Below are positions 14,938-44,700 of a DNA stretch of 64,000 nucleotides, piece after piece (the first letter of the stretch is position 1; the number at the start of each line of letters is the position of its first letter). Made by a program: the position numbers and the translations under genes. The stretch comes from Gracilinanus agilis. Lineage: Eukaryota. The stretch lies in the NCBI RefSeq assembly GCF_016433145.1, contig NC_058131.1, positions 232,045,076-232,109,075 on the forward strand. The letters run 5' to 3'. The notes below the pieces were generated by a model. The model ran no database searches. It had not been told where the DNA came from and saw only the letters and a list, made by a program, of their open reading frames with translations.

Positions 14938-17900
14938 ATGATTCTCTGGCGGGCATACCAGCAAGCACTGGCTGCTCACCCATGGAAGGTACAGGTTATC
15001 ACAGCTGGTGAGTATTTTCCTGGAACTGGGAGGGACTACAGCAGGCTGTGCCTTTGGGGCGAAACTGGATTCCCTTCTCACCTCCCTCAATCCTGTTTAC
15101 CAACTAGCAGAGGGGCATCAACAGCAGAGATTCTCCTTAGTCCTACCCACCAGGATGAGGTGGTTCAATAAGTATAATCTAAACAAGATTTTCCCTGAGG
15201 TCCTTTTAGGGTTTATTCTCCCCATAATCAATCTACCTTGGTGCTGAGGTCATCCTTAATGGATTGAAAGGCAGTCCCTGTTGGTCCCCAAGCACCTGCT
15301 CCTTCCTTCCCCAAGGTTCTCTTTCTCTTTATGCTTTTCTTATCACAATCTTCATTCCTCACGACCAGAAGTCCAGGTTGTGGCTCTTTTTAAAAGAGGT
15401 GATGGTACAAGGAAAAGCCATTCATGAGATGTGATTTGAGGACTTAAAGTTTAGCTCACCCAAGAAAACCTCCTCTGGAGACCTACTGTGGGGACCCACG
15501 ATTTCCTATAGAGTCAGTCCTTTGTGTGAAGAGACTGGGGAAAGTAACCCACTAGAGACTATGAATACTTTCCTTTAACAGATGAGCTATCCTTGGAGAT
15601 TGGGGCATAGGGCCCTGAAGGGATGATAGATACATAAGTAAGTTTTGTTAGATGAAAGGGTCTTGACCATAGCCCAGACCATGGGGGTTTGCCTTGGGAT
15701 AGGATTCTGGGACATTTAAGATAAGGAGCTTAGAAAGGGTCCAGGTGTTGTTGAAAGAGGAGAGTAGGAGTTGGTGCTAAAGACCTTTTCCTATTTACTG
15801 CCACATCAACCCCAGAGTCTAAAATAAGTGGCTGTGAGTATCTGAGTTCTTCCCATTTTTCTCCCCTGCTTCAGACTCCCCTGGGTCCTTACCCAGCCCA
15901 CTGTGTCTGACCACCCCATGTCTTGTCCTCGGTGTGCCCGCCAGGGCAGTGACTCACCTGGGCTGCGTGTGTGTGGTGACTCATGCTGCACTATGTGGCC
16001 ATGATGGGAACTGACACGCTGGGCTCTGTGCCCGGCCAGCTTCTACATTTGTCCAGAGTTGGCAGCTGCCAGGAGGAAGATCTGAGGGTGGACTTGAGGA
16101 GAAAAGAGGGATGACCCCTTTGCCTTTTCTTTTCACATCCTGGTAGTGAACCTGGAAAGTGTCTTCTGGCCATGCAAAAGAAGCTTGAGATTTTGTGGAT
16201 TGTTTTTGAGAATCCTACCATGAGGAGAGTGTAGTGGAATGAGTAGCCCATACTTGGGGGTCCCCGGTTCCTGGACATCTGACCAGGATAGGATTGAGAA
16301 CCAAAGCTTTCTCCAAGTCATTTCCTTTGCAGAAGCCAGTTAAGTTCCAGGTTCTGTCTTGAAGGTTTTGTTCTGGGCCAGGCTACAAACTGAACCAAAG
16401 GTATACCTAGACTCTCTAGATCTCCAAAATACCCTGTTTCCCAGAAAGTCTCTCATATTTCCACATTCTGCGAACACTGCTCGAAATGGACCAAACTGCA
16501 GACATGGGAGACCAAACTGCAGTCCTCTATACCCTTTTCTGGACATTAATGACCCATTATTCGTATTGTTATTAATAATAGATTAAATCTACATAGTGTT
16601 TGTGTGGCTTACAAATTATTTTAAATATATTCTCTCATTTCATCCTTATAACAAAACTCTGTAAGGTTGGATGCCACAACATTATTACTCTTATTTGTAA
16701 ATGAGAAAACTGAGATGGAGAGATTTGATGGTTTGATCAAAGTTATACAGCTACTAAATGTCAGAAGTGGAATTTGAACCGTAATCTCCCTCACCCATTG
16801 TGCTGCCCCACAGAACATACCAGGAGTGAATTCTACCCCTGGGTAGTGTCTGGTCCAATCTCACAAGCTCTTTGTATGGCATTGGGTTTGACTTTTGCCA
16901 TGTCTGAGAATGATCTTGTTCTGATCAGACCTCAGGGGAGTTTCAGGGTAGACCAGGAGAGCCTGGGGAGGGGGAATGGAATCTCCTTCTGGCTCAGCAG
17001 TTATTATATCACCCCTGTGGATCCTGGAGAAACTGAGTCAGCCTTGTTCTTCCCTTTTGTGGAGGCTGTATCTGGCACCGTTCCAGGCATTCTGGGCTTG
17101 CCAGAAATAGGAATTAAATTCCCCTGGGAATACTGGAACTAACTCACATTCCCTGGGAAGTGAAGCAAAGTAATGGGAAGAGCCTTTGCCTTGGACTCTA
17201 CAGAACCAGATTCTAGTCTCAGTTCTTTCATTGACTGGTTGTATAAAAGCCTTCACTTGTCTGAAAGTCAGTTTCTTCATGTGTAAACTGAGAGGCCCCA
17301 CTGATCTAATCTATTGTTCCTTCCACCTTTCCATTCTGTGATTCTTAGGGATAGGTTCTTTCTGATAGTAGAAAGTGTACAGGATGTAGACTCAAGGAGA
17401 ACCTGGGTTCTCAAAATCTCCAGTCTCAAAGTTGAAAGGTTCTTGAAAGACCTTTTCAATATCTGAATATTAATCTCCTCTACAATGTCCCTAGCAAATG
17501 GTCATTCAAGTCAGATCCTAGTGGTTGCTGCCTATTGCCTGTGTATCCTTGGGCAAGTCACTTCTGTAAATGAAGGGGCTGTAAATTTTTAAAATCTCTT
17601 TCATTTCTTAATCCTAAGATTCTTAAGAATCCTCCCAACCTCCCAAGACTGTTTCAGAACCCAAATCCTAGGATTTAGCTTCTGCTGGTCTAGACTGGAC
17701 ACCACAACTTACAAAACTATGTTTTCCACTGCCCTAGAGACCCTTCTTTCCTTTTCAGAAGGGCAATAGGTGGCTGTGTGTAGGCAAAATGTGACTCAAT
17801 AGCCAGGGCAGGAAGCTGTAGACCCCAGGGCTCTCAGGGTACCCTTCTTCCTGAAGCATGAAAAATAAGCCCCATCTTATTCCTTTCCTCCCCTCCCTGG

Positions 17901-20900
17901 TCATTTTTGTCCTGTGCTTCCAGCTCATCCTGGGCTTCTTGCCAGACTGAGCCCCTACCTTGACACTGTTTAATCTCCTGAGAGGCCCCTGGGGAGAAGA
18001 AGGGGGAGCTGGTGAGTTGGCAGCACTGGTGGCTCTGTCCCACCCAGGGCTCCTGCTTTTCAAGGACACGTTTCCTATTTTCAGTCCTCGGAGGAGATTT
18101 GTACCCTTCTTTCTTTTTCTCATTTACCTCTATCTTTGCTCCTCTCCCAACCCACTATTAAGATTTCCCTTTTCTGCCTCTAGAATCCCTTTTGACCTCT
18201 GAATTGTGGTCAGTCCTAGAGAGGCAGAGAGGGCTCCCCCTGATTACAAGATCCCCTGACTTGATCTTCTAGAGGGGGGACATAGGACTGCTGCTGGGGG
18301 TCCTGAATGGACCAGCCCCCTAGGATTGGTTCTCCTTTTTTCCCTTTCTCTTCTTCCTCCCCACTCCCATACTGGCTCCTCTGGGGAGTGACAGCATCAG
18401 AACCTGGCCCCAGCCCAGAAAGATGACGTCATTGCCTGCACCAGCTATCTGCCCAGTGGGCTCTGTGCCCAGCGGTGCTTAGGGGCTTCACAGCCTAGCT
18501 GCCCTGTTGCTTTATGAAGAGTCATCAGGTTAGATGCTCAGATTAGTGGTGTCACCCTCCACCTCTCCATTCCCTAGACCTCTAGAAAGAATGAGACTGG
18601 ATCCGGATATCAGAATGGTCCTAGGTCCTGCACCCAAACACATCCTGAAGGATCTCCAAGAAGCTGGGGCAGTTTGGGAGTTTGTATCTTCAGTTCAAGT
18701 CAGCTCACATTTTTTGAGCACCCATTAAATAGTTCTACTTTCAAGGAGTTTCCCAGGGTAAAAGAATGTGTGCACAGATCACTAAATACATATTGGAGTA
18801 AGGACTGGATCTGTGTCTTCATTGGCATGTGTGGAGATTAGCACTTTCTCCCACAACTTATAGGTTCAGAGAATTGCCTAGAACAGAGAGGCCGAATGAC
18901 TCGTTACCCAGGCAGTCTACAGATGGGTCTTGATCCCACGTCTTCCCAGATTTAAGACCTGTTCTCTGTTCATTACAATATGCTGCCTCTAGTACAAAAG
19001 CAAAATACATGCGAAAGAAATAGGAAATAGTTTCCAGAAAGGTCCTGCCCTAGGAAGTGACACCTGAGCTGTGCTTTGGAGAAAGTGAGGGGGGGTGTTA
19101 AGAGGTGGAAGAGAAGAAGGGAAGCGTTATAGGCCTGGGGACAAAGCTTGGAGGTCAGAAATGGGCGATTGTGTGTCCAGAGAAGAATCTATCAGCCATT
19201 TGGGCTGAAATAGTGGGAAAGGGAGAACAATATGTGATCAAGCTGGAAAGACATTTTGGAGCTAGATTATAGAGGGCTTTAAACATCACATGAAGTTTGT
19301 ATTTTATAATAGGAAATTGCTGCAGGGGAATATTGCTAGAGGATATAGTTGGCTGGGAGGGGAGCTAGTGGGGTACCAGACCCTGGACTGAATGAATGCT
19401 GAGGCTATGGCATAGAGAAATTCCCGAGTCTCCCTCTTCTCTCAGCCTAAGGCAAGGCTTGGACCTCTTCACCAGGGCCCTCAGGACAACTGGCCCAAGG
19501 TAAAGTCCTTGCTTACCTCATCCTCTGCACATCCCTGCCTTTCAGTTATCATAAAACTAATCCAAATTGGGAGTTAGATCCAGAGTGGTGGTAGCTTCAG
19601 AAACCCATCCCACACCCCAACATGAAAAGGAAGTCTGGGACCCACTTCAGTCTGGAGTGAAACAAAATTATTAGCTCTGTGAGGACAAAGAATGTGACTT
19701 GCCCAAGCTTTATGTCTCCTTGTTACCAGTGTCTCACAGGTTTTCTATATTCAATACTTAATAAATATTTGTTAAAATTGTCCCAGCTGGGCATACTAGA
19801 CAAAGCACCATCTTCCACCTCTGCAACTTGCTGGCCCATCATTTACCAAGAACACAGGGCTGGAGGAGCAGCTAGGTAGCACAGTGGAGAGCACCAGGCC
19901 TGGAGTCTAGAGGACTAGGTTTCAAATTTGACCTCAAACACTTTCTGAAATTGGTATGGGCTTACCTCTTCTTCCCTTCCCAATCATTTGCCTCCTGGTA
20001 GGTGCTGCTTTATTTTTTCTTCTGTTCCTTTTTTATAAAATTATTTTGTTTCCAATTAACAAAAATTTATTTTAATCCTAATTCTCCTCATTAAAAGAAA
20101 AACAAAACTCTTGTAACAAATAGGTGTAGCTAAAAACAAATTCCTTCATGGGCTATATCCAGAAAAATATGTCTTATTCTGCACCCTGAGGCCATCACCT
20201 CTCTCAGCTGGGTAATGGGTTCTCTTCTTTCTTTCCTGTATATTCATAGCTCCAACCACTCTGAGTGGATTCAGGAAGGAACAGGCAGGTGATAGGATGG
20301 AGGACTAGAGGGTCAGGATAACAAATAAACAAGCTTCTAGGGCCCCTCTTCTTCCTGTACCATGGCCCACTGTTAGAATCTTCCGCTTCCATTCTTAGGT
20401 CTGATTGAGTCCCAGTTTGAATGTGTAAATGGGGAGGATGTTGTTGGGGGGGGGGGGGAAGAAAGCTCCTGTAAGAAGAAATGTTAATTTAATTCTCTTT
20501 GCCCTTGCTATGGGGAGAATAACTCCACCCTTTTGGAACTTATACGAATAAGATAATAGCCAGGCTGCCTGTGCAGGGCTCCCCTGGAAGAAGTCCTGGG
20601 GCTGCTTCATGGGTAAGAGTGCCAGCAGGGCTGACTAACCTCTTCCAGCTCCTAGCCTCACCCAATTGGCTATTGGCTATGGCTTGTCCACTTCTTAGGG
20701 CACGGCGTGGGAGTTGGGAAAAGAGCTGAGTGCACCGGGTATGTGAGCCAGAATGGTGATCATGCAGCCAGCCTGGACGTCAGAGCCAGCCAGGATACAC
20801 GTTGGGGTGGAGGGATGTGTTTGCCCAGTTCTAATTGAGGGCACAGGGACACTAGTTGTTGAGGGGCTCCAGGCGGGTGCTTTCATTACTCAGCAAGACA

Positions 20901-23900
20901 CATAAGAAAGCTGGAGATTATGCTTTACACAGAGGCCTCTCTGTTTGTGCATGCACACACATACACATTCGAATTAGAGCCCCTCATAGCCCACACACTC
21001 ACTAGGCATTCAGTCAGTGTTAATGATGTCTGTCTCAGGACCTGTGTGGGGGCATCTGACTGCAGGAGCCTATGGATTCCTGGGCATCACAGGGACCCTT
21101 TTCCACTGGCTTCTGTCACTGCTTCTGGATTCTCTCTTCAAAGCCTCTGAGGAAATGTTTCTTTCCAAACCCAGTTGGGGCTGCGAGGTGAGGAGGCATC
21201 CATAGTATGTGGCTATCTGAAAGCCAGAGGGAGGCAAGGTCTGTTTCATCTAACTCCCTTAGGGCTGCTCTTTTTGCAGTAGCCCTAGAGTGTTTCTGGA
21301 AATGACCCATTTGTTCTGTTCCCTATAGATCATAGGTCATAGATCTAGGACTGATGGGATCTTAAAAGTCCATCAAGTTCAATCTCCCAATTTTTAAAGC
21401 TGGGAAAAATGAGCCCAAGGAAATTGAGTGACTTGTCAGAGGTCATACAGATAGCAAGTGAAAGAGATAGAATTTGAACCAGGTCCCTTTATTCTACAGC
21501 TAGGGTTTTTTACACTGTACCCTGCTACCTTCATGTAGACTATGAAACCTAGAGAAAGGACAGATTCTGATTGGAGCCAAATTGGGATTTGTGTCAGAGC
21601 CAGGAATCAAACTCGGGCTTCATGGTCCTACTTGTGCCCTATCTACAGCACTTTGCCTCAAATCCCAACTGCATTTGAAGTTCTCTCTCAGATATATCTG
21701 TAGCTGGTGAGTCCTTTACATACTTTCAGGATCACCTCAGAGCTCTTCAAGTAGAAAGGATTTCCTCCTTCAAGTAGAAAGAATGACCTCAAGGAACCCT
21801 ACTTACAGTCTCCTCATCCCAATGGTTAACTGGCAAAGACATAGCTACCCTTGGTGACAATCCTTTGAGGTAGGGAACCAAGAAACCAAGGAGGGACCCT
21901 CAGTCTAGAACAGTGCCTAAAAAATAGGATGTCTTCCCCAAGACCCTTGGAAGAAGGAAGTGAAGGCAGTAATTGCCAGAACCTTATGCTCAATAGGTTT
22001 CACACCATCTTTTAGAAAACTCAGCTTTCCCTTGGATTCCCCATGAAATAGCCTGACAGTATCTTCTAACCCCCAGGGTCCCTGATGGGTGTAGGTGACA
22101 TCATCTCTCAGCAGCTAATAGAGAAACGTGGTTTAGAGAAGCACCAGGCCCACAGGACCCTGACCATGGCTTTTATAGGCTGCAGCTTTGTGGTGAGTCA
22201 CACCTGTGGTGGACAGGTTGGTCATTTGGACAGTGGACCCAGATCTCCATCTTCCCTTGTACTCTCCAGGCTCTTGACCTCCATCTCTTCGTGCCTATAA
22301 ACCCCGTCTCTCCTTTTCCTCAGCTGTTTCCCCTGTGGTGTGATTGCATTTTTTTTTTTGAGGAAAACAATATTACTATTTACTAACTAAAGTTTCCCTT
22401 TTTTGTTTGTTTTCCTGAGTTTGCTTTCAGGGCCCTGTGGTAGGTGGCTGGTATCGGGTTTTGGATCGACTCATCCGTGGCAATACCAAGATGGATGCAC
22501 TGAAGAAGATGGTAATAGATCAGGTGAGCAGAGGGATAGAAGTGGGGTGATTCAGAAGGGGCAGTGACTATATGGATCTGTGTAGAAGGAATGTAATTAC
22601 TCTTTGGCAGATGACCATCAGAGCTTTCACATGTTCTCTTCTTCCTATTCTCTTTTCTTTCAGGGGGGCTTTGCCCCATGTTTTTTGGCATGCTTGCTCC
22701 CAATAATTGGTACATTTGATGGACTGTCAGTCAAGGACAACTGGGTCCGACTGAAGCGGGTAAGCATGGAACCTGAACTAGATTGATAGGGGATTTTGTT
22801 GAGCATCTGGCTAGATCTGTGATATCCCCACTGGAATATAGGAGAATTAAAACAATTTAGGAATATTAGAAGTTCAGAGAGTTAACAGGTAAGTTTTAAA
22901 CCAGTGATAGGGGGGAAAGGCAGTTGTGGTATAAGACTGTTCATGGCCACTGAATACCAAGAGGTCTCATTCATTGAAAACCACTCAGTTATTAAGTGAA
23001 GTAGGAAATAAAGTGTAATAGAACACTGTGGTTGGTCCTGGGGGAGGGTCACAGATAATTAAGACTGATCCCTGCTCTCATGGGGTTCATAGAAGAGAAT
23101 GTAATAGGGCATGGTGCCAAGTGGAGGGAGTGAAAGACTTAACCTTTTCTTTACTTGCTTCTTCAGGATTACCCTGATGCCCTCATCACCAATTACTATG
23201 TAAGAGACAATTATTCTCCTTAAGGCTATGGAAAGACCTGGGCTTGGGCCTTCTCTGGATTGAATTTTAGCTGGGGATGACTTGATAGGCCTGAGCAGGT
23301 TACCTCTTGGACTGGGTTTACATGCCCAGGGGTTGGGATGAGTCTGGCAAAGGCTCCTTCACCAGAATGGGGGCTAAAAAATACCATTCACAGAGAAATA
23401 ACTTCTTCTTTATGTTTCTTTTACAGATCTGGCCTACTGTGCAGTTGGCCAATTTCTACCTTATTCCCCTTGCCTACAGGTAGGGAAAAATTCCATCTCT
23501 ACACCACCCTTCAAGACAACTCCAACTTCCAGCTCCCCAAATCTTCCATGATATTTCAGGGGCAGAAATAAAAGTCTGAAAGTTACTTCATTCTCATTCT
23601 ATCCTTAACCTCCCCCCCAATCCCAAACTGAAATCTTCTGCCCACCAGTCAGGGCTCTTCATATTCCTTTGTGTTTTAGTCAGAACCTCTTACTCCTCCC
23701 AGAACTCTCTACAGTCTGCCCTCTGAATTTCATACAGAACACTAAAAAATATTCTCCTTCCACAGTCCTTTTTCCTGGCCCATCTGAGTCCCTCACCTCT
23801 GATGCCATTGCTGGAAGGACAGAGTACAGGCTGTTGCATCCTAGGTTAGGCAGATAGGTAGGGCAGGAGGCCAGGTAGGCTATGCCAGTCTCATCAGTGA

Positions 23901-24923
23901 GAGAAAATATTTTATCACTCTTAAGTAAAACTGGTGGGTAGCATACAATTTGGTTGCCAACCCTCAAGAAGACAACTGGAGAAATGCAAAAAAAATAATA
24001 ATAATTGGAGGGGAGGTGATCTTGTGATTGGATCTCTAGTCTGGAAAGGGGGAAGTTAAGAGGAAAAAACTTAAATGCATAAAAACCATGTGCACCAGGG
24101 ATACAGTGAACATGGACCCCCAAATCCTGAAATGTTGGGATGAAGGGAAGCCTATTGAAATGCCAATTTGGGAAACTTATAGCAAATAAAAGGAAATACC
24201 ATCACATGAAGCAGGTCGTAAACTTATGAAAGTCACTACCCCAAGAGTCGGTATGGGGAGGAAATAGAAATACTCAAAAAGCATTTGGATAAGTGCATGA
24301 ACTATAAGCCATAAAATGGTTATTAAAAGGAGCAAATTTCTACTCTATCTTTAAAAAGTAATGTTGGGCAGGGGCAACTAGGCTCAGCCAGGCTTAGAGG
24401 CAAAAGGTCCTGGGTTCAAATCTGGTATCAGACACTTCTTAGCTGTTTGACCCTGGGTAAGACACTTGTCCCTAACTGCCTAGCCCTTGCCATTCCCCTG
24501 TCTTAGAATTGATACTAAGATAGAAGGTAAGGGTTAAAAAAAGTAATATTAGGGAGGCAGGTGTGCTTTCCCATGGTACAGCCCTTGGTGCCTCTGTTGG
24601 CTCCAGAACACTGTCTTGGATAAACCATGGTTCTGAGCTGGTACTATTTTAAGGGGGTAAAGAGTAGGGGAGGACTCGGGTAATAAGATGAGGTTCTAAG
24701 TTCTGCCAGTTTTCCATGAGAGAAAATCTATCCCTTTGCTTTTTTCTCTCTCTTTTCTCTTTCTTTCCCCCCATTGCCCTTCTCCTTTGTCTTTCTCATC
24801 CCTGTCCCTGCCCCCTTTATTATGTTTTCAGAAATGCTTTTCCTGTTCTTCAGGTTGGCTTTTGTCCAGTGTGTTGCTGTTATCTGGAACACCTACCTAT
24901 CCTGGAAGTCACATCAGTCCTGA
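14938..24923 (+). CDS. MPV17: Mitochondrial inner membrane protein Mpv17, 176 aa; 7 coding exons
   Basis: Coding exons: 14938-15007, 22077-22192, 22431-22523, 22664-22759, 23167-23199, 23427-23479, 24854-24923 (70+116+93+96+33+53+70 = 531 nt). Translation [37 protein letters not shown]...GPVVGGWY...DQGGFAPCF...[51 protein letters not shown] matches recalled MPV17. All introns GT-AG. Confidence 0.97.
24371..24543 (+). mobile_element. Marsupial SINE with degenerate TSD
   Basis: SINE body; AAAAAGTAAT(G/A)TT on both flanks. Confidence 0.75.
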
Positions 24924-25119
24924 GTCTACCTGTCCTCATGCCCCCTCCTTGAAACTATACCTCTTGACCCTGGGATGGGTTCAGATGACTTCAGCGCAGT
25001 CCCAACAGTTTTCAGGATTCCAGGCCACTGGACAGAAAGGAATTCTGGGATGGAACACTGAAATGAATCCCCACCCCCACCCCCATGTAAATAGTACAAC
25101 CTTGCAGGTAGTTTGAGAA

Positions 25120-25125
25120 AATAAA
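25120..25125 (+). terminator. MPV17 proximal polyadenylation signal (AATAAA)
   Basis: AATAAA ~200 nt after the MPV17 stop, followed by a T/GT-rich downstream region. Confidence 0.65.
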
Positions 25126-25471
25126 AACTTATGAGTATCTCTTGCTTCTTTTGCTTCCGTTATGTGGTCTTTGCCCAGTTCTCTGCTCATCTCTTCCTAA
25201 CCCATTCCCCTGCAAGTTGAGCCAGACCCTTAATTCCCCCTAGATCTTCACAGACACCTCTTCCTTAACTAAATGGTAGCAATAATTGCTGTGGTTTGTG
25301 GCTCTAGACAGAACACAGTCCCAAACGAAAGTTAATCAAGGTCCGGTGATGTTTCTTGTTGGTATCCTACCCTAACCTTTCCTCTTCCCTGAGTCAGGGA
25401 GAAATTCAGTCAGGCTGAAGCAGAACTTGGCACTTATCCCTCTTCCCCCACCCCTGCTTCCCTGACTTAAG

Positions 25472-25477
25472 AATAAA
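25472..25477 (+). terminator. Possible distal MPV17 polyadenylation signal (AATAAA)
   Basis: Second AATAAA, followed by GGGTGTTTCTTCTTTG downstream. Confidence 0.4.
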
Positions 25478-25862
25478 GGAATCAACTAGACCACTGGGTG
25501 TTTCTTCTTTGGATAAAGCAAAACTCTCATCTGCTCAGGATATTGGAGATCCCCTTTTGGTACGGGAATCTCCTAGGGACCGGAGACTATCTGCTTGGAA
25601 ATCCTCAATTAAAAGGCCCTGGCCATTTAAATTTGAGATCTAGAGAGAAGTGCAAGATGGTGGGGATTCTTTAGGAAGAGAGGCTCTAGCTCAGTGGATT
25701 CATTTAGTCCCTAGCCACCAGGAGGACTTTGGACCCAGGCTCTGGTCACAGACCTGGAAGAGCAGGCTATGAAGGCTCAGTGCCAACTGTATAAAGAACC
25801 CCCTTTCCTCCTCGATCTAGAATTCAGATTCCTCTTCTGCTGAAACAGTTTGAACAGTTGTG

Positions 25863-25883
25863 ATCAGAACCACGGACAGCTCC
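25863..25883 (+). promoter_or_regulatory. RE1/NRSE (REST) site upstream of UCN
   Basis: ATCAGAACCACGGACAGCTCC vs consensus TTCAGCACCACGGACAGCGCC: 18/21 identical with canonical 2-bp half-site spacing. Confidence 0.75.
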
Positions 25884-26239
25884 ACTCTTCTGCTATTGGT
25901 CTGTTTGACTTTTCCTTCTAGGCTAGAAACATTTTCGCCCAGAAGAGTTGAGGTTTTCCCTCAAGGAGGAGGGCTCAGGAAAGGGAAGACGCTGTGGACC
26001 CAATTGAAAACGGTGTGAGGTCCTCCTGAGTTCTTGGGACCAAGCCTGATCTTCCCAAGTCGAAGCCTATCTGGAACTAATGCTGTCCATAACGACTCCT
26101 GAGCCCCATCCTCGGAGTTTGCCCCTAGAGGTAGCAGGCGGTATTCCATTGGGGTGGTCTCGTCCCTAGGGAAGTCCAGCTCCTGGGCCGGCAGGTCTCA
26201 GAGCTGCGGTCCTGTCAGTTCATCTACAATCACTGCATG

Positions 26240-26419
26240 TCCTTCGCTGACGTCAATTGGAGCTGCCCCGTCCCTATATAAATCTGGCAGCAGCCCCGGG
26301 ACACTCCCCGCGTTCCCCAGGCACTGGCAACCGGCCCCGTGCTCCCAGACTCCGGTTCGATTGGGACAGTTACCGAAGCTCTGATACCGCCCCCCGCGGC
26401 AACGCGCTCGGAGAAACCC
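26240..26419 (+). promoter_or_regulatory. UCN core promoter (CRE, inverted CCAAT, TATA) and non-coding exon 1
   Basis: TGACGTCA 26248-26255, ATTGG 26256-26260, TATATAAA 26275-26282. Inferred TSS ~26305-26310, donor CCC|GTGAGT at 26419/26420, exon 2 acceptor CTCAG| at 26837. Confidence 0.8.
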
Positions 26420-26863
26420 GTGAGTGGCTCGTTCTGAGCGCACCCGCGCCCCTAGCTCTGCGCCCTCCCGGACCAGCCCTTTATCGCTTGTTCCCGCAGC
26501 TGCTTTGCTGGGTAGCCTACTCCCCATCCCCTCAGGTCCGTCAGTACAGGCCCGGGTGGGCTGGGAGGAGGGACGGCTCTGCCACGAGACGTGTCCCAGA
26601 CCTCTGGGCTCTGGGCGAGGAAAAAAGGGTGGCTGGGGAGTGCGCCTGGACTCAGTGCCTGTTGGGGCACGTGGTGGATGTGATCTCTGAGAAGCACATG
26701 GTATCCGGGGTTAGAGTGGGAGGGAATACACTGGGGGAGAAGTGGCCCACGGCTCGGGGCAGCTCTGAACATCCCCCCCCCGCCCCGCCCCCAGCCCGTC
26801 TTCCCTGCGCCCTACCCATTGTGTGTATGCATCTCAGGAAGCGGCAGCGGAGATACCAATACC

Positions 26864-27256
26864 ATGAGGCGGCCAGGGCGCACGGCATTGTTGGCGGCAC
26901 TGCTGCTCATCTTGGTCCAACTGTGCCCGGGCAGCTGCGGCTGGGGAACTCTGGAGGCTGTACCCCCCCTGGACAAGGGTCTGGATCGGAGTTTGCGGGG
27001 GAGCCCCAGGAACCGGGCCGGGGGAGCCAGTGCCCTGCTCCTCCTCCTGACCGAGCGTTTCCCTCGTCTGGCAGCTGGGACTGGTACCCTGACTGCGCCC
27101 CTGGGCGATCGGCCCAAGCCCAAACGGGACGAACCTTCTCTCTCCATTGACTTGACCTTCCACCTGCTGCGGACCCTGCTGGAGCTGGCACGGACGCAGA
27201 GTCAGCGGGAGCGCGCGGAGCAGAACCGGCTCATCTTCGATTCGGTGGGCAAATGA
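26864..27256 (+). CDS. UCN: Urocortin (urocortin 1) precursor, 130 aa; mature 40-aa amidated peptide at 27128-27247
   Basis: ATG in ACCATGA context; hydrophobic signal peptide (ALLAALLLILVQLCPGS); KR cleavage site; DEPSLSIDLTFHLLRTLLELARTQSQRERAEQNRLIFDSV followed by the GK amidation signal; CRF-family signature. The ORF track start at 26819 lies in the intron. Confidence 0.98.
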   Translation: MRRPGRTALLAALLLILVQLCPGSCGWGTLEAVPPLDKGLDRSLRGSPRNRAGGASALLLLLTERFPRLAAGTGTLTAPLGDRPKPKRDEPSLSIDLTFHLLRTLLELARTQSQRERAEQNRLIFDSVGK

Positions 27257-27392
27257 GTCCGGGCTGGCCAGCTCCGCTCCGCCGTCTGGGACCGGAGAGG
27301 CGGCGTCTGGGGGCTAGTCCTAAAAGCCCCCGGAACTGTGCGGAGGCGCGGCCGGCTTCAGCTTCCTACCGCGGACCGTGTTTTTGTTTTCT

Positions 27393-27398
27393 AATAAA
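27393..27398 (+). terminator. UCN polyadenylation signal
   Basis: AATAAA 137 nt after the stop, preceded by a U-rich tract (TGTTTTTGTTTTCT). Confidence 0.8.
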
Positions 27399-27934
27399 AG
27401 TGATGAAGAGTTGCTGTCTCCCGCTTCAGTGCGGGTGCGGGCGCTGGTGCGGGGCCGGGAACGGGGGTGGAGGGGAACACAGTGGTGGGACCCTGGACCC
27501 GGCCATTCTGCTGGGTCGGACCCAACCCCTTTCTGGGGAACCCCAGCGGACTACATAGAGGAAGGAGAGAGAGGGGGATAGATCTTGCCCAGCGCGCTCA
27601 GAAAACACCTATGAAACCTCTGCCCACTCCTAGATCTTTCCGAAAGCCGAACGCTCAAGGATGTTCCACAAACTCCTCCGCGACGCTCTAATTGCTACCC
27701 AAGCCCAACCTGAGTAGACAAGAACCCCAACTCGCATCTCCTGCTAAGGTCTGGGCTCTGTAGAGCTTTCTTCTTCCTTGAGTGAAGGACCCTAACTTGA
27801 GCAGGGACAGTGAGGGGATGGGACCACGGGTAACCGCTGGGGATGGGGAGAAGAGGAAGCAACAGGGACTCGGATTGGGGGGGTGGTGTCCCAGGGCCAT
27901 GGGGTCACGGGGGCAGAAGGAGAGAATTCGGAGC

Positions 27935-28458: not shown

Positions 28459-31400
28459 CTAAGCCTCCAGTCTCTCTTCCTCAGCCCCAGCAGCACTGCC
28501 ATCTTCCCCTTCCAACACCAATTCATCTTCTTCTTCCTCCCCAGAACCCCCTGGGGCAAATATAAAAACTTGATTACACAGGCCTGGACCCTTACACATC
28601 CTGAACCCTTAGCTCCTTCATGTCCTTTAAATAGGTCCAAACCCAAGACACCATATGATTGATACAGAAGGTGCAGGACCACCTCTAGCTATAAGGCAAT
28701 ATGATGCATTGGTCACAGAACCTGGGTTCCAATCCTATATCTGAAGCTTACTTCTTGGGCAACTCACTTCCCCTTCCTGGGACTCAGTTTCCTTACCTGT
28801 AAAATGAGGGAAGGGGTCGAACTAGATGACCTTTAAGGTCCCTTCTAGTTCTAGAGTTTTGATCCTATGATCCTGGTTCTGCCACCTGTGGGACTTTGGA
28901 TGACTCACAATCTCTCTGGGCTTCAATTTCCTGAACTGAAAATAAGGGAGTGGGAGTAGATGACCCAGAAAGTCCTTTCTCTCTCTAAATCTATGATCAT
29001 ATTGCAGTAAATTGCTTCCAATTCGCCCCCCCCCATTTCCTTTAATTCAAGCATTTCAGTCTACCCATCTTTCCCCACATCTCTTACCAGTCTGGAAGTC
29101 AATCGTCCGAAGCATCTCAGCCACGTGCTCCACATTCACTGAGAACTGTTCCATGCTTTCATAGCCTGGCTCTGGCCGCCCAGCCAACTCCACCTTTGCC
29201 ATGTCCCCAACCCTACAACATGGGCTCAACTCAACCCTGAAAAGCCCTTCAAGAGGTCCCCTTCATTGAGACGCCTAAATCTTCTCTGATTCTCAAGCTC
29301 CTTCCTGCTCAATGAGCACAGTCCTCTCAGACATGGGTCACCACATACACATTTATCCTCTCCTCCCTCTTCCCCTTTTAACAGCCTCCCCAGCCCCAGC
29401 CTAAGGGAAGCCCAGCACACCAGACTCACTTTTTAATCAGCTCCTTGGCCTGCTACAGGGGGGAAAGAGAGGGTAAAAGTGAGGCCAGGATAGCCAGCTA
29501 CAACCCAGCCTTCCCTACACATACCTCTGAGGAGTATCCCCAGCCCACTCCCTCTCCAACAGTCCTGAAAGCCCATTAGCCCTGTAGTTGCCCCACCTGG
29601 AGGTAAAGGGCCATCTGTGGCTCCTCCATAGACTGAATGGCAGACTCCACAAGCTTGGATGAAGCCTCCAAGTGGTCTCCGTATTGACGAATGAGTCCTC
29701 GAACCCGCTGAAGCTTTTCTTCCTGCTCCCGAGCCAGGGCTTGAAGCAGCTCAGCCTTCCTCTCCTCCAACACTGCACACAATGTCTCAAACCTCTGTCC
29801 CAGGAGTTGCTTCTGCCTGCGGCTGTTGTCCTGAGGTTGGGATAGAGATGTTAGGAGGAGAGTTCTTCAGAGGACCAGTGGTCTCAAGCACCCAGAAAAA
29901 GCCCAGAGAGCACCTGAAACCTGTGCTGTCAGGGTTCTGCCATGTTACCACAGATGGACACAGAGCTGAGAGATGTCACTGTCATACTCACAGGCACTCA
30001 AATGCAAGCACACTCACACAGGATTTGTATGGTCCCGTTCAATGTCCTACCTCCAAAGGAGAGAGGAAGGAAGGGTTGGGAAGACCAGAAGATATTCTGA
30101 TCTGATAGGGGCCAAGGAAAGGCACAACTATATGATTCATCAATACACACTGGAACAGGATAGCATGGCACAGTGGAAAGAGTACCAGGCCTGGAGATGG
30201 GAGTTCCTTGGTTGAAATCTGGTCTCAGACACTTCCTAGTTGTGTGACCCTGGGCAAGTCAATTACCCCTCATTGCCTAGCCTAGCACACTATTGACTTA
30301 GAATTATCACTAGGACAGGAAATAAGTTTTTTTTTAATTAAAAAAAATACACACAGGAATTCCTAGTCCTAACTCTGTATCTTGGATAGAGCTCCAAATA
30401 AATGCTTTGCTTTGCCCCTCTCCACATCAGGTTCTACACTTCATTTTCCTTGAGTTTTAGCAGTTTCCCACCCCTCCTAGTCCCACCTCTCCAGGAGGCT
30501 CCTGCCCATCACTTCCCCAGAAGATGCCCCAAACTTACTTCAATAGTCTGGCACACCTCTTCCATCTGAGTAATGACTGCCTGGACCCGATCGTTTCCAG
30601 CCACCAGCATGGCAATGCCATCGCTCAGCTCACTCTGCCATATATGTCAGGCACAAAATCATTCTCTGTCTAGGTATCTTCTCACTTCTAGATATTCCCC
30701 CTCCCTTCAAACACAGAGCCAGGATGGACCACAACAGGAGGAACTAAGGAATTCTTGCCCAAGGAAGGTATCCTTAAGAACCTATTTCAAAATATCTAAT
30801 CCCAGGGAAGCTAAGTCTTCAACGGCTAGAGAGGAGGGATGTGGATTTCAGGGAATCCTGAAACAAATGTGTGGGCATTATGGGAAGTGGGGTAGAGGAT
30901 GGATCCCAAAGGACCTCACAGTTTGGACAGGAGAGACTTCAAGACCCCCTACACTTGAGTGTGTTACCTTCTGGCGTTTGTAGATGTTGGGCAGTGGTGC
31001 CACTTCACAGTCCTTATGAGCTCCAAATACCTTGCAGAGGGAACAGGTGGGCACTTCACAACTCAGGCAATAGATGTTAATCTTCTCTTCCTCATGCTCC
31101 TCACACATTAGGTGCTGCTCTGCCTTAGAATGCAAGGGCCTGGGCAGTAGTAGCACAGGGATCATCAGGAGAACAACCAGAGTTAGTGAAGTCAGTTTTA
31201 TTGATCCACAATTAGGTATGGGAAGAAGTAAGGGCAGAGATTGAAACACAAATTTATTCTCTTCATGAACTAGTTGTATCTACTTAGTTTTAAGGTCCAA
31301 GATCACCTCCTAAATCCAGTTAGCTTTCTAACCAATATACACCTTTGGACACAAAACTAACCTTCTAGGTGCACAATATTTTAAAAAACCCTTACCTTCA

Positions 31401-37400: not shown

Positions 37401-39257
37401 CTACTGTGTGCCAAGCACTGTCCTAGGTGCTAGAAGAGATTTAGAGATAAGTCAAGAGCCTTGTCCTCGTGGAATTACCAACCAATCCATGAGCAATTGA
37501 ACACTTGTGAAATATGGGAATTATAGACATCAACTCTGTTACACAGGAATGAAATCATGAATCCATATTCCTCAAATAAAGATTAGAATATCCTCTTCTA
37601 TAATGGCCAATGTCCTGAAGAAAAAACCGGGCCAGGTAGATCACAGAATATTCCTACTCTTTTCCCCTGATCAAAAACAAACAGGGAGGGGCAGCTGAGT
37701 AGTTCAGTGGATTGAGAGTCAGGCCTAGAGACAGGAGGTCCTGGGTTCAGATCTGGCTTCAGACACTTCCTAGCTGTGTGATCCTGGGCAAGTCTCTTAA
37801 CCCCCATTGCCTAGCCCTTATTGCTCTTCTGCCTCAGAACCAATACACAGTATTGATTCCAAGACGGAAGGTAAGGGTTTAAAAAAAAATTTTTTTAAAC
37901 AACAACAAACAAACAAGTACTATATTCTTTCTGTGGTGTGGGCATGCTCTTCCTTACTCTAAGGAAAGGATCAAGAAAGAGTAATTTCCCTTTTGCTGTC
38001 CCCTGCTAGCCAACCCAGGCCTAGCCAGGGGGAGTGAGGAGTCATTGAGCCAATAATAGGAGGAAGGAGAGAGCTGGGTCTGGCATCTCTCCCGGAATGG
38101 CCCGGTTGATCAGAGCTATACAGACCAGGCCCCCTAGGGTGGTTGGATAAGAGTTCCTGCCCGCTCTGCACAAAGGCCTTAAGAACTACAACAATTTTTT
38201 TTAAACCCTTAACTTCTGTGTGTTGGTTCCTCGGTGGAAGAGTGGTAAGGGTGGGCAATGGGGGTCAAGTGACTTGCCCAGGGTCACACAGCTGAGAAGT
38301 GTCTGAGGCTGGATTTGAACCCAGGACCTCCCATCTCTAGGACTGACTCTCAGTCCATTGAGCTACCCAGCTACCCCCAAGAACTACAACTATTAAGATG
38401 GCACCTTAAGGTTTGTCACTTGCCTTACATAAGAAAGAGAAGTTGAAGAGGGGAGCCCCATAACAATTGAGTTTCCCAATCAATTTGATGAAATTTTAGG
38501 GTTTGGCTAGTACAGGCAGTCCTTATCCCATGTTTGGGATTTTTCAAAGGACACTTCCCAAGGAGATTGGCTTGCCCACTGGCACCATGCTGAGAGGACA
38601 CAGGGAAAGAAGCTGCCTTCAATGTGACTGGCAACTGAGAGTGGATGGATTTAGACTCTTGTTGGAAGAGCTGCTCCCTTCTCTATGGTGGGAACTGCTC
38701 ACAGTTTCTCCATCTCTCCCTCCTCTCTTGCTCTCTCCACCTAGCTAGTATCATCCTTCAGATTTTCATAGATTGAAAGATTTTTGTTGTTGTTCAGTCA
38801 TTTCAGTCATGTCCAGCTTTTTGTGATCTTATTTGGAGTTTTCTTTTGACAAAGATACTGGAGTGGTTTGCCATTCCCTTCTCCAGCTCATTTTCCAAAT
38901 GAGGAAACTAAGCCAAACAGAGTTAAGTGCTTTGCCCAATATCACACAGCTAGTGTCTGAATCTAGATTTGAACTCAGGTCTTCTGGACTCCAAGTCTGG
39001 TACTCTATCCATTATACCACCTAGCTGCCTATATAAATAGATCTATATTCCAAATCTCCCTTCTCTAGAAATAAAGGAAATACACAAATTCTCTCCCTCT
39101 CCATCTCTGTATCTGTCTCTGTCTCTCATATATCTGTGTACGTATTCTTGGTCAATGTATTTAACTCTAGGAGGGAGTGCGTTTCAATATCTGTTCATGG
39201 ACACCCACGAGTCTTTTGTATTTTATTTATTGGGGATGGGAGTGGAATGAGGTAATG

Positions 39258-41750: not shown

Positions 41751-44700
41751 TTAGCTTCTGTCTTAGAATCTATTCTAAGATAGAAGATCAATAAAGGGTA
41801 GGTAATTAGGGTTAAGTGACTTGCCCAAGGTCACACAGCTAGGAAGTATCTGAGGTCAGATTTGAACCCAGGACCTCCCACCTCTAGGCCCAGTACTCTA
41901 TCTGCTGTGCTACTTCTCAGTTTATCTTGTGAGGCAAATCTCAAGATAGATACGCTCAAGGTAGATTCATTCCAAGAAATTTCCCTTATCTTCTGGGTTA
42001 GATTCTGGAATGATATCTCTAGGAAACTCCTTCCTCCTCTAACTAGGAGACAGGGATTCAGAAACATTGTCCATGAACTCTCCTCTTAACCCACAAAAAC
42101 AAATAAGTCTACCTTTGCCATATATCTGTTTCTTTAAGAAATTTCATACTGTCCCCGCTGCTACAATTTCTGGGGACTGGGAAAGTCTACTCTAAGGCAA
42201 CTGACCTCTGTTAGGAAAGTTGTAAACAAGCACGCATAACTCCCATGAACTTGTGCCTAAGAAGCCACTCCAGTTCCTGAAGGGAGCAAGGAAACCTTTA
42301 CCAACTGATATGTGTCCATACAGGGATAGTGAGGTAAGGACTAAGAGCTAGTAAATGAATCTACCCTTTTGAGGGACCTTGAAAGCTGTCAGCTCGGAGC
42401 TTAGGGGACACCTCTTACTTCTCCAATTCCAACTACATCTTAGAGACTGTACTAGTGGCTCTCCTCCTCCACTCGCCTTCTGGGGGCAGAGTATTTCTGG
42501 TTAGGGTGTTTCGGTGTTGAATAGGAGTGATCTGACTTCTCACCTCTTATGTCCTCATTTTGAGCAGGCCTTTCCATGCTTCTAATATGGTAGAGGCATC
42601 GGTGATACTATCACAGCTAAAGCTCTTAGCACAGATTTCCACTCACATCCTCATCTTTACCCAAGTCCTCAGCAATTTCTGGAGAGAGCAAGAAGATAAA
42701 TAGAGGACAAGAGTCATTGACTCTACATCCCTCCATGTAGCATATAGGGAAGTATATGAGTGTCGTTGTATTCTATATTCTGAAGAACAAATTGGGCAAA
42801 AGCTGAATCCTAAAGGCAGGAAGAGTGCTGGGAGAACATGGAAGAAAATCATTTTCTGTATGTACTTTAATTGCAAGAGGACTGGGCAGCATTAAGAATA
42901 ATAAAGGAATTCCATGTTTTATCAAGCCAAGTAAACAGAAATGAATTTTCTCTGACATGAATTCCTATACTGGTGTCTCAGGGAAGATCACTTGTGAAAA
43001 ATGAGTCAACGATGGAAAAAGACCAGCAGCATTGTTGACTGATACTTGGAATGACTAACATATTTTCCTTCCTGTTCAATATGTTTATATTAAATACTCT
43101 ATATCTTGAGCCTGCCTTTATTATAATGTTACTTAGTGCCAATTCTATATCTCATCCATTGCTCTAAGTCTTCATTCCTTTGAGATATCATACAATCTCA
43201 GATTGAGATCTGGAAGTGACTTCAAAGGTCATCGAATCAACATCCTCATTTTACCGGATGAGGAAAATGGGGCCAAGAGAAGGGATGTGTCTTGCCCAAA
43301 GTCATATAGGCAGTAAGTAATAGAAACAGGATTTGAACTTGGGTCCCGTGAGTCCAAGTTCAATGTTTATTCCACTGGGGCCTCCCATTAGTCTCTGTGT
43401 TCTTTGTTATTAGGGCAGAGACTATCTTCATTAAGTTTCAAATAATAGTAGAATTCTATTTGGCTAAGCAAGGTATTTTCCAAAGCTTAGGATCCAATAA
43501 AAATAAGGGAGTAGAAGATGGTAGAGGAACATTAAGTCTGTAACACCTCAACATAGTCTATTCAAAATCTTTTCTCTGGAAAGTGAGACTAGCTGGAGTA
43601 ACACAAAATCCCTGGGAGAGAGAAACTGAAAAGAAAAATAGGAGAACTGAATTGGCTTACTTTACTATATTTTCCTGGAACAGCCCATTGAGACTCAGGC
43701 AGGAAGAGGCACAGGACTTGGAATGAGATCAGAGTAAAAAATCTCGGCTCTGTCAATATTTACCTTTTTGGAGCTTTATTTTCTCATCTATAAACTGTAT
43801 GGGTTTAGACTAAATGATCTTTATAATTCTCTTCTAGCTCTGTTTATGATCTCATCATCCCAACTTTTCTATCCTTATGAAAAGCTCTCTCTTCCTTCAC
43901 CCTCCATCCTAGGACAGGCCTCAGAAATCTCACATCCAGTTATCCTGTCACTGACTTTCCCCCAGCAAATAGTTTGTGGAACCTCAAATAAATAACACGA
44001 CTATCCCTCTCCACCTCCACTCTCAATTTTTTCTTCATTTTGCTCCCCTTTCCAGTGAATAGATGGGTATACCCTGGATCCTTAGACTATTCTTAGATCA
44101 AGGTAAAGTGTAGTGTGCCATAGTGGATAGAGTGGAACTTCCTGTCCAAGAGACTTTTCCTTTGGTCTTCTCTTTTGAACTTCTTCTTTGGAGTTTGTCT
44201 TTAGACACTCTGCATTGGTGAGCTGGCATGAAGGAGGAGACTCTTTCCCTGGATCCTGCATCATCTTGCTGGGTAAGTAGCTGGTCTTCTTTTCGTGGCT
44301 GCATTGTAGAGCCTTGCTGAAGACACCACTGAGTCCTCTGGCTGAAGAGACTACCATGACTCCCCGTGGAGATCGGGACTTAAGAGCCCTTGCTGGGTGG
44401 TGAGCTAGAAGTCTGCAGACAGAAATTATAGGGTATCTAGCTAGACAATACTTTCTACTTCCTTCCTACATTTCTCTCTTTTACTAGATCTCTATTAAAC
44501 TAAATTAAACTAACTAGGGGCAGCTGGGTAGCTCAGTGGATTGAGAGCCAGGTCTAGAGACGGGAGGTCCTAGGTTCAAATCCAGCCTCAGACACTTCCC
44601 AGCTGTGTGACCCTGGGCAAGTCACTTGACCCCCATTGCCCACCCTTACCACTCTTCCACCTCTAAGCCAATACACAGAAGTTAAGGGTTTAAAAATAAA

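What the first reader, a model, noticed from the sequence alone, without database searches (positions are those of the whole stretch)
25863..25883. RE1/NRSE site between the MPV17 poly(A) sites and the UCN promoter
Seen: an 18/21 match to the REST consensus with correct spacing, ~390 bp upstream of the UCN TATA box and 390-740 bp downstream of the MPV17 AATAAA signals. Known: REST silences neuronal and neuroendocrine genes in other cells, and CRH, from the same peptide family, is REST-regulated. Inference: a REST-off/CREB-on switch confines UCN expression despite its position next to a housekeeping gene. Bound REST might also limit MPV17 read-through into UCN.
Basis: partly seen in the sequence, partly recalled or inferred. 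Interest (0 to 1): 0.7.

Follow-up and report, generated by a model that had tools for sequence, protein, structure and literature searches.

The report
Conserved REST silencer site upstream of urocortin
The 21-letter match is a real, very old binding site for the neuronal-gene repressor REST in front of the urocortin gene of an opossum-like marsupial. Its mouse counterpart is already listed as REST-bound in published genome-wide data, so it is genuine but ordinary.

Summary
ATCAGAACCACGGACAGCTCC lies at 25863-25883 (+). It matches the RE1/NRSE consensus at 18 of 21 positions and is the only such match in 64 kb (0 of 100 shuffles).

It sits 392 bp before the UCN TATA box and 743 and 391 bp after two AATAAA signals downstream of MPV17.

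The window comes from a didelphid marsupial: its UCN protein is 94% identical to that of Monodelphis.

Seven different non-primate eutherian UCN contigs carry a full RE1, on the same strand, 256-318 nt before an invariant CRE. A pangolin-like contig keeps only the right half-site.

Across the 800 bp upstream of UCN, the RE1 is as conserved as the CRE (0.86 against a mean of 0.37).

The mouse orthologue (TTCGGAACCACGGACAGCTCC, PWM 0.92, 308 bp 5' of Ucn) is catalogued in Johnson et al. 2008 (PMC2573930). It was REST-bound in embryonic stem cells by ChIP-chip and by a 10-tag ChIP-PET cluster.

So this is the marsupial copy of a REST site at least as old as the marsupial-placental split.

Repression of UCN itself is unproven: Ucn is absent from that paper's list of genes responding to dominant-negative REST. 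The read-through-barrier idea has no support.

The element is already known in mouse. No paper found discusses it in its text.

The parts
24854..24923 (+). Last coding exon of MPV17 (...[23 protein letters not shown]), stop codon at 24921-24923
   Evidence: ORF and sequence reading. The upstream MPV17 exons were located by tblastn of P0106. The exons were not joined.
25120..25125 (+). Proximal AATAAA after MPV17; probably the poly(A) signal actually used
   Evidence: Sequence. A 755-nt RNA-like contig from a small run of the same organism (X2) ends at 25120, and no X2 contig covers 25121-26350. Contigs cannot prove where an RNA ends.
25472..25477 (+). Second AATAAA; its use is unverified
   Evidence: Sequence only. 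It has no read support.
25863..25883 (+). RE1/NRSE (REST binding site): ATCAGAACCACGGACAGCTCC
   Evidence: Unique in the window. Orthologous motifs are present in eutherian contigs. It is a conservation island. The mouse orthologue is REST-bound.
26223..26243 (+). Conserved promoter block TCTACAATCACTGCATGTCCT just 5' of the CRE; the factor that binds it is unknown
   Evidence: Identity to the 8 eutherian sequences is 0.83.
26248..26255 (+). cAMP response element TGACGTCA
   Evidence: Invariant in all sequences aligned.
26275..26282 (+). UCN TATA box TATATAAA
   Evidence: Conserved in all sequences, 27 nt after the start of the CRE.
26305..26419 (+). UCN non-coding exon 1. The start is inferred at about 30 nt after the TATA box; the GT splice donor is at 26420.
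   Evidence: The donor context cc|gtgagtggct is shared with L001. The transcription start site is inferred, not measured.
26838..27256 (+). UCN exon 2, with the coding sequence at 26864-27256 (130 aa, CRF family)
27393..27398 (+). UCN AATAAA poly(A) signal
   Evidence: Sequence.
29576..31249 (-). Exons of a TRIM54-like (MuRF-type) RING/B-box gene that converges on UCN
   Evidence: B-box zinc finger PF00643, E 2.8e-8. The same neighbour gene is present in Monodelphis and wombat.

Best explanation
The 21-mer is the didelphid orthologue of a promoter-proximal RE1/NRSE that was already present upstream of UCN in the common ancestor of marsupials and placentals. Inferred mechanism, from the established REST model: REST's zinc fingers bind the two half-sites (TCAGAACC and GGACAGC, 2-bp spacer) about 430 bp upstream of the UCN start site. 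REST then recruits its Sin3/HDAC and CoREST co-repressor complexes. This keeps the nearby CRE/TATA promoter quiet in cells with high REST, such as stem cells, progenitors and most non-neural cells. Where REST is low, the invariant CRE can drive the gene. Shown here: the motif, its uniqueness, its conservation in position and strand, and published REST occupancy of the mouse orthologue. Inferred: occupancy in this marsupial, and repression of UCN.
For: (1) The motif is unique and beyond chance.
(2) Orthologous motifs lie on the UCN strand at similar distances 5' of the CRE:
- Murid-like L010: TTCAGAACCACGGACAGCTCC, 20/21 identical to the window site and with the same C6-to-A change; 256 nt.
- Peromyscus-like L001: TTCAGGACCGCGGACAGCTCC; 305 nt.
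- Bat-like L003, and L008 and L009: GTCAGCACCACGGACAGCCCC; 288, 307 and 288 nt.
- Ruminant-like L004/L005: GTCAGCACCATGGACAGCCCC; 285 nt.
- L007: GTCAGCACCATGGACAGATCC; 318 nt.
- The window: 385 nt.
(3) In a MAFFT alignment of 25500-26300 against 8 eutherian upstream regions, mean identity is 0.37. The RE1 21-mer scores 0.86, second only to the CRE at 0.875. Nothing outside the RE1 and the core promoter exceeds 0.62 (alignments A1 and A2).
(4) Johnson et al. 2008 (PMC2573930) list mouse RE1 mus9694:3, PWM 0.9204, TTCGGAACCACGGACAGCTCC, with Ucn as the 5'-proximal target. ChIP-chip gave enrichment 2.04 at FDR 1.6% in ES cells and 1.32 at FDR 3.9% in neural stem cells. In ES cells a 10-tag ChIP-PET cluster lies 308 bp 5' of Ucn; the paper's high-confidence cut-off is 5 tags.
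(5) The window site is closer to consensus than the bound mouse site, because it has A rather than G at position 4.
(6) Near-identical 21-mers elsewhere in the mouse genome are in the REST ChIP-PET lists: ATCAGAACCACGGACAGCTAC, and TTCAGAACCACGGACAGCTAC with PWM 0.9403. C6-to-A sites score up to PWM 0.963 with 6.5-fold enrichment.
Against: - There are no REST binding data for any marsupial.
- Ucn is not among the 911 genes altered by dominant-negative REST in mouse neural stem cells (Dataset S5).
- The mouse site is not in the neural-stem-cell high-confidence PET motif list, and it is barely enriched in NIH3T3 cells (1.11, FDR 11%). Occupancy is therefore moderate and depends on cell type.
- The pangolin-like contig has lost the left half-site (GTCACTGCCATGGACAGCCCC), so the element can be dispensed with.
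- From general knowledge: UCN is expressed in several REST-positive peripheral tissues, so silencing cannot be absolute.
- I could not score the site with the JASPAR or Johnson matrix, because no matrix was available.
- The letters at the site in three related didelphids were not obtained, because the table was cut off.
Confidence: 0.75

Rival explanations
1. REST does bind here, but the element's main job is not to silence UCN. It might act on a neighbour (the muscle gene TRIM54 or the housekeeping gene MPV17). Or it might act as a chromatin boundary or Pol II roadblock that separates MPV17 transcription from UCN.
For: The mouse table lists Trim54 and Mpv17 as alternative 3'-proximal targets. 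Ucn did not respond to dominant-negative REST in neural stem cells. Automated annotation has produced MPV17-UCN fusion models in Camelus ferus (P0106, carrying both the Mpv17_PMP22 and CRF domains), which hints at read-through transcripts.
Against: The site keeps a tight distance to the UCN CRE/TATA (256-385 nt) in all lineages, whereas its distance to the end of MPV17 varies. An RNA-like contig of the same organism already ends at the first AATAAA, 743 bp before the site. From general knowledge, REST is not known to work as a transcription roadblock.
Confidence: 0.15
2. The conserved block is kept for a different DNA-binding factor, or for another function that overlaps the right half-site GGACAGC. 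On this view its likeness to an RE1 is secondary.
For: The right half GGACAGC and the following CC are invariant even in the pangolin-like contig that lost the left half.
Against: Seven different eutherian contigs and the marsupial keep both halves with the exact 2-bp spacer. The mouse site is bound by REST in vivo. No Rfam RNA family matches the region.
Confidence: 0.06
3. A chance near-match with no function.
For: It deviates from the strict core at position 6. Mammalian genomes hold many unbound RE1-like sequences; several table rows with PWM above 0.90 show no enrichment.
Against: No shuffle of the window, or of any fetched locus with a match, gave a hit. The motif recurs at the orthologous place across roughly 160 million years (a divergence time from general knowledge). 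It is as conserved as the CRE.
Confidence: 0.02

Closest known systems
Mouse Ucn RE1 (mus9694:3, chr5:31415784-31415805 in the assembly used; Johnson et al. 2008 PLoS Biol 6:e256, Datasets S1, S2, S4)
   Same: It is the orthologous element. It has the same gene order (Mpv17 - RE1 - Ucn - Trim54) and lies 5'-proximal to Ucn. The two sites agree at 19 of 21 letters, including the unusual A at position 6 and the CTCC tail.
   Different: The mouse site has G at position 4 and T at position 1, and lies about 308 bp from the start site. The marsupial site lies about 430 bp away because of extra sequence between the RE1 and the promoter. Binding was measured in mouse and not in the marsupial.
RE1 in the intron of CRH (Seth and Majzoub 2001, as cited in PMC5979500)
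   Same: It is a gene of the same peptide family under REST control, and it also has a cAMP-responsive promoter.
   Different: The CRH element is intronic and the UCN element is upstream. They are therefore not positional homologues and probably arose independently (inference). The CRH element has been tested functionally; the UCN element has not.
Canonical 21-bp RE1/NRSE sites, defined originally at SCN2A and SCG10 (Chong 1995 and Schoenherr 1995, cited)
   Same: It has a bipartite 21-bp motif, a 2-bp spacer and a promoter-proximal position next to a neuronal or neuroendocrine gene.
   Different: It has one core deviation (C6 to A), which in vivo data show is tolerated.

Membership tests
Canonical RE1/NRSE (REST binding site) | 21-bp bipartite motif: left half-site TCAGCACC, a 2-bp spacer, right half-site GGACAGC | tested here: met
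   18/21 to the consensus and 13/14 to the specified core, with canonical spacing. The only core change is C6 to A.
Canonical RE1/NRSE (REST binding site) | Score above the threshold of a curated matrix (Johnson RE1 PSSM above 0.90-0.91, or JASPAR MA0138) | not testable with these tools
   No matrix was available. Indirect evidence only: the more deviant mouse orthologue scores 0.9204, TTCAGAACCACGGACAGCTAC scores 0.9403 and ATCAGAACCGCGGACAGCGCA scores 0.9147.
Canonical RE1/NRSE (REST binding site) | REST occupancy in vivo | not testable with these tools
   No marsupial REST ChIP data were reachable. The mouse orthologue was bound in ES cells by ChIP-chip (enrichment 2.04, FDR 1.6%) and by a 10-tag PET cluster.
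Canonical RE1/NRSE (REST binding site) | Purifying selection: conserved at the orthologous position | tested here: met
   A full motif is present in 7 different eutherian contigs and in the marsupial, on the same strand, 256-385 nt 5' of the CRE. Identity is 0.86 against a background of 0.37. One lineage (pangolin-like) has lost the left half.
Canonical RE1/NRSE (REST binding site) | REST-dependent repression of the linked gene | not tested
Ucn is absent from the dominant-negative-REST responsive gene list in mouse neural stem cells. That is either weakly negative or uninformative, if the activators of the promoter are absent in those cells.

The most novel reading that the evidence does not exclude
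The UCN RE1 may be a deliberately weakened, evolutionarily tuned site. Position 6 has changed from the optimal C to A (didelphid, murids) or G (Peromyscus-like), and the left half was lost in a pangolin-like lineage. This would set lineage-specific, leaky REST repression that permits peripheral UCN expression. The site might also serve as the boundary between a housekeeping gene and a neuropeptide gene that lie only about 1.2 kb apart.
Probability: 0.12. Interest if true: 0.45.

Novelty: already known. Interest (0 to 1): 0.3.

Why it matters
It shows that the scan's sequence-only reader can pick out a true transcription-factor site. It also extends a REST site that was catalogued in mouse, but never discussed in a paper's text, back to the marsupial-placental ancestor. 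For stress-peptide biology, it gives a concrete and testable cis-element for why urocortin stays restricted even though it sits about 1.2 kb behind a housekeeping gene. It adds no new kind of mechanism.

Tried and rejected
- Marsupial orthologues: the Monodelphis and wombat UCN loci were found, but no DNA was delivered because the files were too large. Koala and Tasmanian devil proteins were not on record.
- Didelphid relatives by reads: contigs of three related species cover the site at about 88-89% identity.
- A search with a non-coding ORF from the promoter (26257-26778), meant to fish out relatives' contigs, found nothing.
- Primate-like UCN proteins (P0010, P0089) were deliberately not looked up, to avoid human or near-human contigs.
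- Text searches linking urocortin to REST/NRSF/RE1 found no paper that discusses such a site. A 2026 paper reports Ucn going up in a mouse model with REST dysfunction but does not tie Ucn to REST.
- The supplements of three other REST papers hold no UCN or MPV17 entry.
- No Rfam family matches 24500-27600.
- Repeat origin was rejected: the site is in no repeat family of the window, and the nearest SINE copy is at 24361-24561.
- Matrix scoring (FIMO with MA0138) could not be run, because there was no matrix and no network.
- MPV17 exons were only located one by one.

Full report
**1. The observation**

The window reads ATCAGAACCACGGACAGCTCC at 25863-25883 on the + strand. Against the classical RE1/NRSE consensus TTCAGCACCACGGACAGCGCC this is 18 of 21. 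The mismatches are at position 1 (A for T), position 6 (A for C) and position 19 (T for G).

It is the only place on either strand of the 64 kb window with three or fewer mismatches. None of 100 dinucleotide-preserving shuffles produced a match. Against the stricter core NNCAGCACCNNGGACAGNNNC it has a single mismatch, C6 to A, and 2 of 100 shuffles reached that. The two half-sites have the canonical 2-bp spacer.

The stated distances are right:
- TATATAAA begins at 26275, 392 bp after the site.
- A perfect CRE, TGACGTCA, is at 26248-26255.
- AATAAA hexamers lie at 25120 and 25472, which are 743 and 391 bp before the site.

**2. Surroundings and organism**

- UCN: the single-exon coding sequence at 26864-27256 encodes a 130-aa CRF-family prepropeptide. 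Its best match is Monodelphis domestica urocortin at 94%, followed by Australian marsupials at 72-86% and eutherians at about 60-65%. The window is therefore from a didelphid opossum other than M. domestica. The many MIR/CORE-SINE-like repeats fit a marsupial.
- MPV17: its exons lie on the + strand (exon by exon, not joined). The last exon ends with a stop codon at 24921-24923.
- Downstream neighbour: a TRIM54-like B-box gene lies on the minus strand.
- Gene order: Monodelphis and wombat have the same order, MPV17(+), UCN(+), RING gene(-).
- MPV17 3' end: a small run of the same organism (X2) has an RNA-like 755-nt contig that ends at 25120, the first AATAAA, and nothing over 25121-26350. This suggests the proximal poly(A) signal is the one used and that the RE1 is intergenic. 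Contigs cannot prove where an RNA ends.
- Other checks: the site is in no repeat family of the window, and no Rfam family matches 24500-27600.

**3. Conservation**

NCBI marsupial assemblies could not be delivered. Short public contigs that carry eutherian UCN genes could be fetched. I first checked each unnamed protein against the named ones and left out the two primate-like ones.

Every contig has TGACGTCA followed 27 nt later by TATATAAG. All but one have a full RE1 on the UCN strand upstream of the CRE:

| Contig | 21-mer | nt 5' of the CRE |
|---|---|---|
| Window (didelphid) | ATCAGAACCACGGACAGCTCC | 385 |
| L010 (murid-like) | TTCAGAACCACGGACAGCTCC | 256 |
| L001/L002 (Peromyscus-like) | TTCAGGACCGCGGACAGCTCC | 305 |
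| L003 (phyllostomid-bat-like) | GTCAGCACCACGGACAGCCCC | 288 |
| L004/L005 (ruminant-like) | GTCAGCACCATGGACAGCCCC | 285 |
| L007 | GTCAGCACCATGGACAGATCC | 318 |
| L008 | GTCAGCACCACGGACAGCCCC | 307 |
| L009 | GTCAGCACCACGGACAGCCCC | 288 |

The L010 site is 20/21 identical to the window site. The pangolin-like L006 has GTCACTGCCATGGACAGCCCC at the aligned place, so the right half is intact and the left half has decayed.

In a MAFFT alignment of window 25500-26300 with the eight eutherian upstream regions, the window's letters are shared on average 0.37 of the time. The best 21-mers are:
- the CRE, 0.875;
- the RE1, 0.863;
- a block just 5' of the CRE, 0.833;
- the TATA box, 0.768.

Nothing else exceeds 0.62 (alignments A1 and A2). 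The RE1 is an isolated island of conservation in otherwise unalignable sequence. That is the signature of a constrained binding site.

One gap remains. Contigs of three related didelphids do span the site at about 88-89% identity, but the table of differences was cut off before it reached the site.

**4. What is already known**

No paper in the searchable library discusses urocortin as a REST target in its text.

The supplements of Johnson et al. 2008 (PLoS Biol 6:e256, PMC2573930) do contain the orthologous mouse site:
- Dataset S1 lists RE1 mus9694:3, PWM 0.9204, TTCGGAACCACGGACAGCTCC. Its targets are Ucn (5' proximal), Trim54 and Mpv17 (both 3' proximal).
- ChIP-chip enrichment was 2.04 (FDR 1.6%) in E14 ES cells, 1.32 (FDR 3.9%) in NS5 neural stem cells and 1.11 (FDR 11%) in NIH3T3 cells.
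- Datasets S2 and S4 list an ES-cell ChIP-PET cluster of 10 tags, 308 bp 5' of Ucn. The paper's high-confidence cut-off is 5 tags.
- The cluster is not in the neural-stem-cell motif list, Dataset S3.

The 308-bp distance agrees with the murid contig L010, where the RE1 lies 283 nt before the TATA box.

The window site differs from the bound mouse site only at position 1 and at position 4, where the window has the consensus A. It should therefore bind at least as well (inference). The same tables show that the C6-to-A variant is tolerated:
- TTCAGAACCATGGACAGCGCC: PWM 0.9633, 6.5-fold enrichment.
- TTCAGAACCACGGACAGAGAC: PWM 0.9395, 4.9-fold enrichment.
- ATCAGAACCGCGGACAGCGCA: PWM 0.9147, 4.4-fold enrichment.
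- ATCAGAACCACGGACAGCTAC, 20/21 to the window site, is in the ES-cell bound list.

**5. Mechanism**

The best reading is a REST-recruiting silencer at least as old as the marsupial-placental split. It lies about 430 bp upstream of the UCN start site and acts on the adjacent CRE/TATA promoter.
- Shown: motif quality, uniqueness, orthology, constraint, and REST occupancy in mouse.
- Inferred from the established REST model: recruitment of HDAC and CoREST complexes and repression of UCN in REST-high cells, with the CRE taking over where REST is low.

Against a strong repressive role:
- Ucn is not among the 911 genes that changed after dominant-negative REST in mouse neural stem cells.
- Occupancy is moderate and depends on cell type.
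- One lineage has let the left half-site decay.

The read-through-barrier idea has no positive evidence. The site's distance to the UCN promoter is held within 256-385 nt, while its distance to the MPV17 end varies. The MPV17 RNA-like contig already stops 743 bp before the site. The fused MPV17-UCN gene models in some annotations show only that read-through or mis-joining is conceivable.

**6. Comparison and novelty**

The element meets the sequence and conservation criteria of a canonical RE1. In vivo binding and repression could not be tested for this species.

Its closest known relative is its own mouse orthologue. The CRH RE1 is intronic, so it is an analogue rather than a positional homologue.

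The element is thus already known from genome-wide catalogues. What is added here is that it dates back at least to the marsupial-placental ancestor, that position 6 varies between lineages (C, A or G), and that no focused study of it exists.

**7. Verdict**

The switch model is plausible but unproven, and the read-through idea is unsupported. This is an ordinary, real regulatory site of low to moderate interest.

**Operator rules**

No N stretch was involved. Read laying received 1,301 letters.

Noticed in passing
P0106 and P0061; window 14938-23480 and 27059-27253: NCBI's 'protein Mpv17 [Camelus ferus]' (228 aa) is a chimeric model: MPV17 residues 1-154 are joined to the urocortin peptide exon, so it carries both the Mpv17_PMP22 and CRF Pfam domains. 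'Mpv17 isoform X3 [Sorex fumeus]' is in fact a plain urocortin precursor. These are either read-through transcripts or annotation errors at this tight gene pair.
   Followed up: partly
L006:1428-1448: The pangolin-like contig keeps the right RE1 half-site (GGACAGCCCC) but its left half has decayed to GTCACTGCC. This looks like a lineage-specific loss or weakening of the UCN RE1.
   Followed up: partly
L008:2501-2521: One eutherian contig has a second, non-canonical RE1-like sequence, CCTCAGCACCGGGACAGCGCT, with a spacer one base short. It lies about 160 nt downstream of the UCN TATA box, in the leader or intron. The window has no counterpart at 3 or fewer mismatches.
   Followed up: no
window 26223-26243: The block TCTACAATCACTGCATGTCCT, immediately 5' of the CRE, is about as conserved (0.83) as the CRE and the RE1. 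The factor that binds it was not identified.
   Followed up: no
window 25050-25120: A 755-nt contig from a small, RNA-like run of the same organism ends exactly at the first AATAAA after MPV17. This suggests a 3' UTR of about 200 nt and that the second AATAAA at 25472 is not used.
   Followed up: partly
window 26772-26795: There is a C-rich run (ccccccccgccccgccccc) in UCN intron 1. The short-read contigs of two related didelphids both appear to end near 26780, by extrapolation from their lengths. This looks like an assembly breakpoint rather than biology.
   Followed up: no
window 2718-2932, 24361-24561, 30130-30348, 37664-37905, 44493-44719 and many more: The window holds dozens of MIR/CORE-SINE-like copies (GGTTCAAATCTGGCCTCAGACACTT...GTGACCCTGGGCAAGTCACTT) in both orientations, typical of marsupial genomes. 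One copy sits in the last MPV17 intron.
   Followed up: no
window 55652-55907: There is a tandem duplication of a 128-nt unit: two copies, 91% identical.
   Followed up: no
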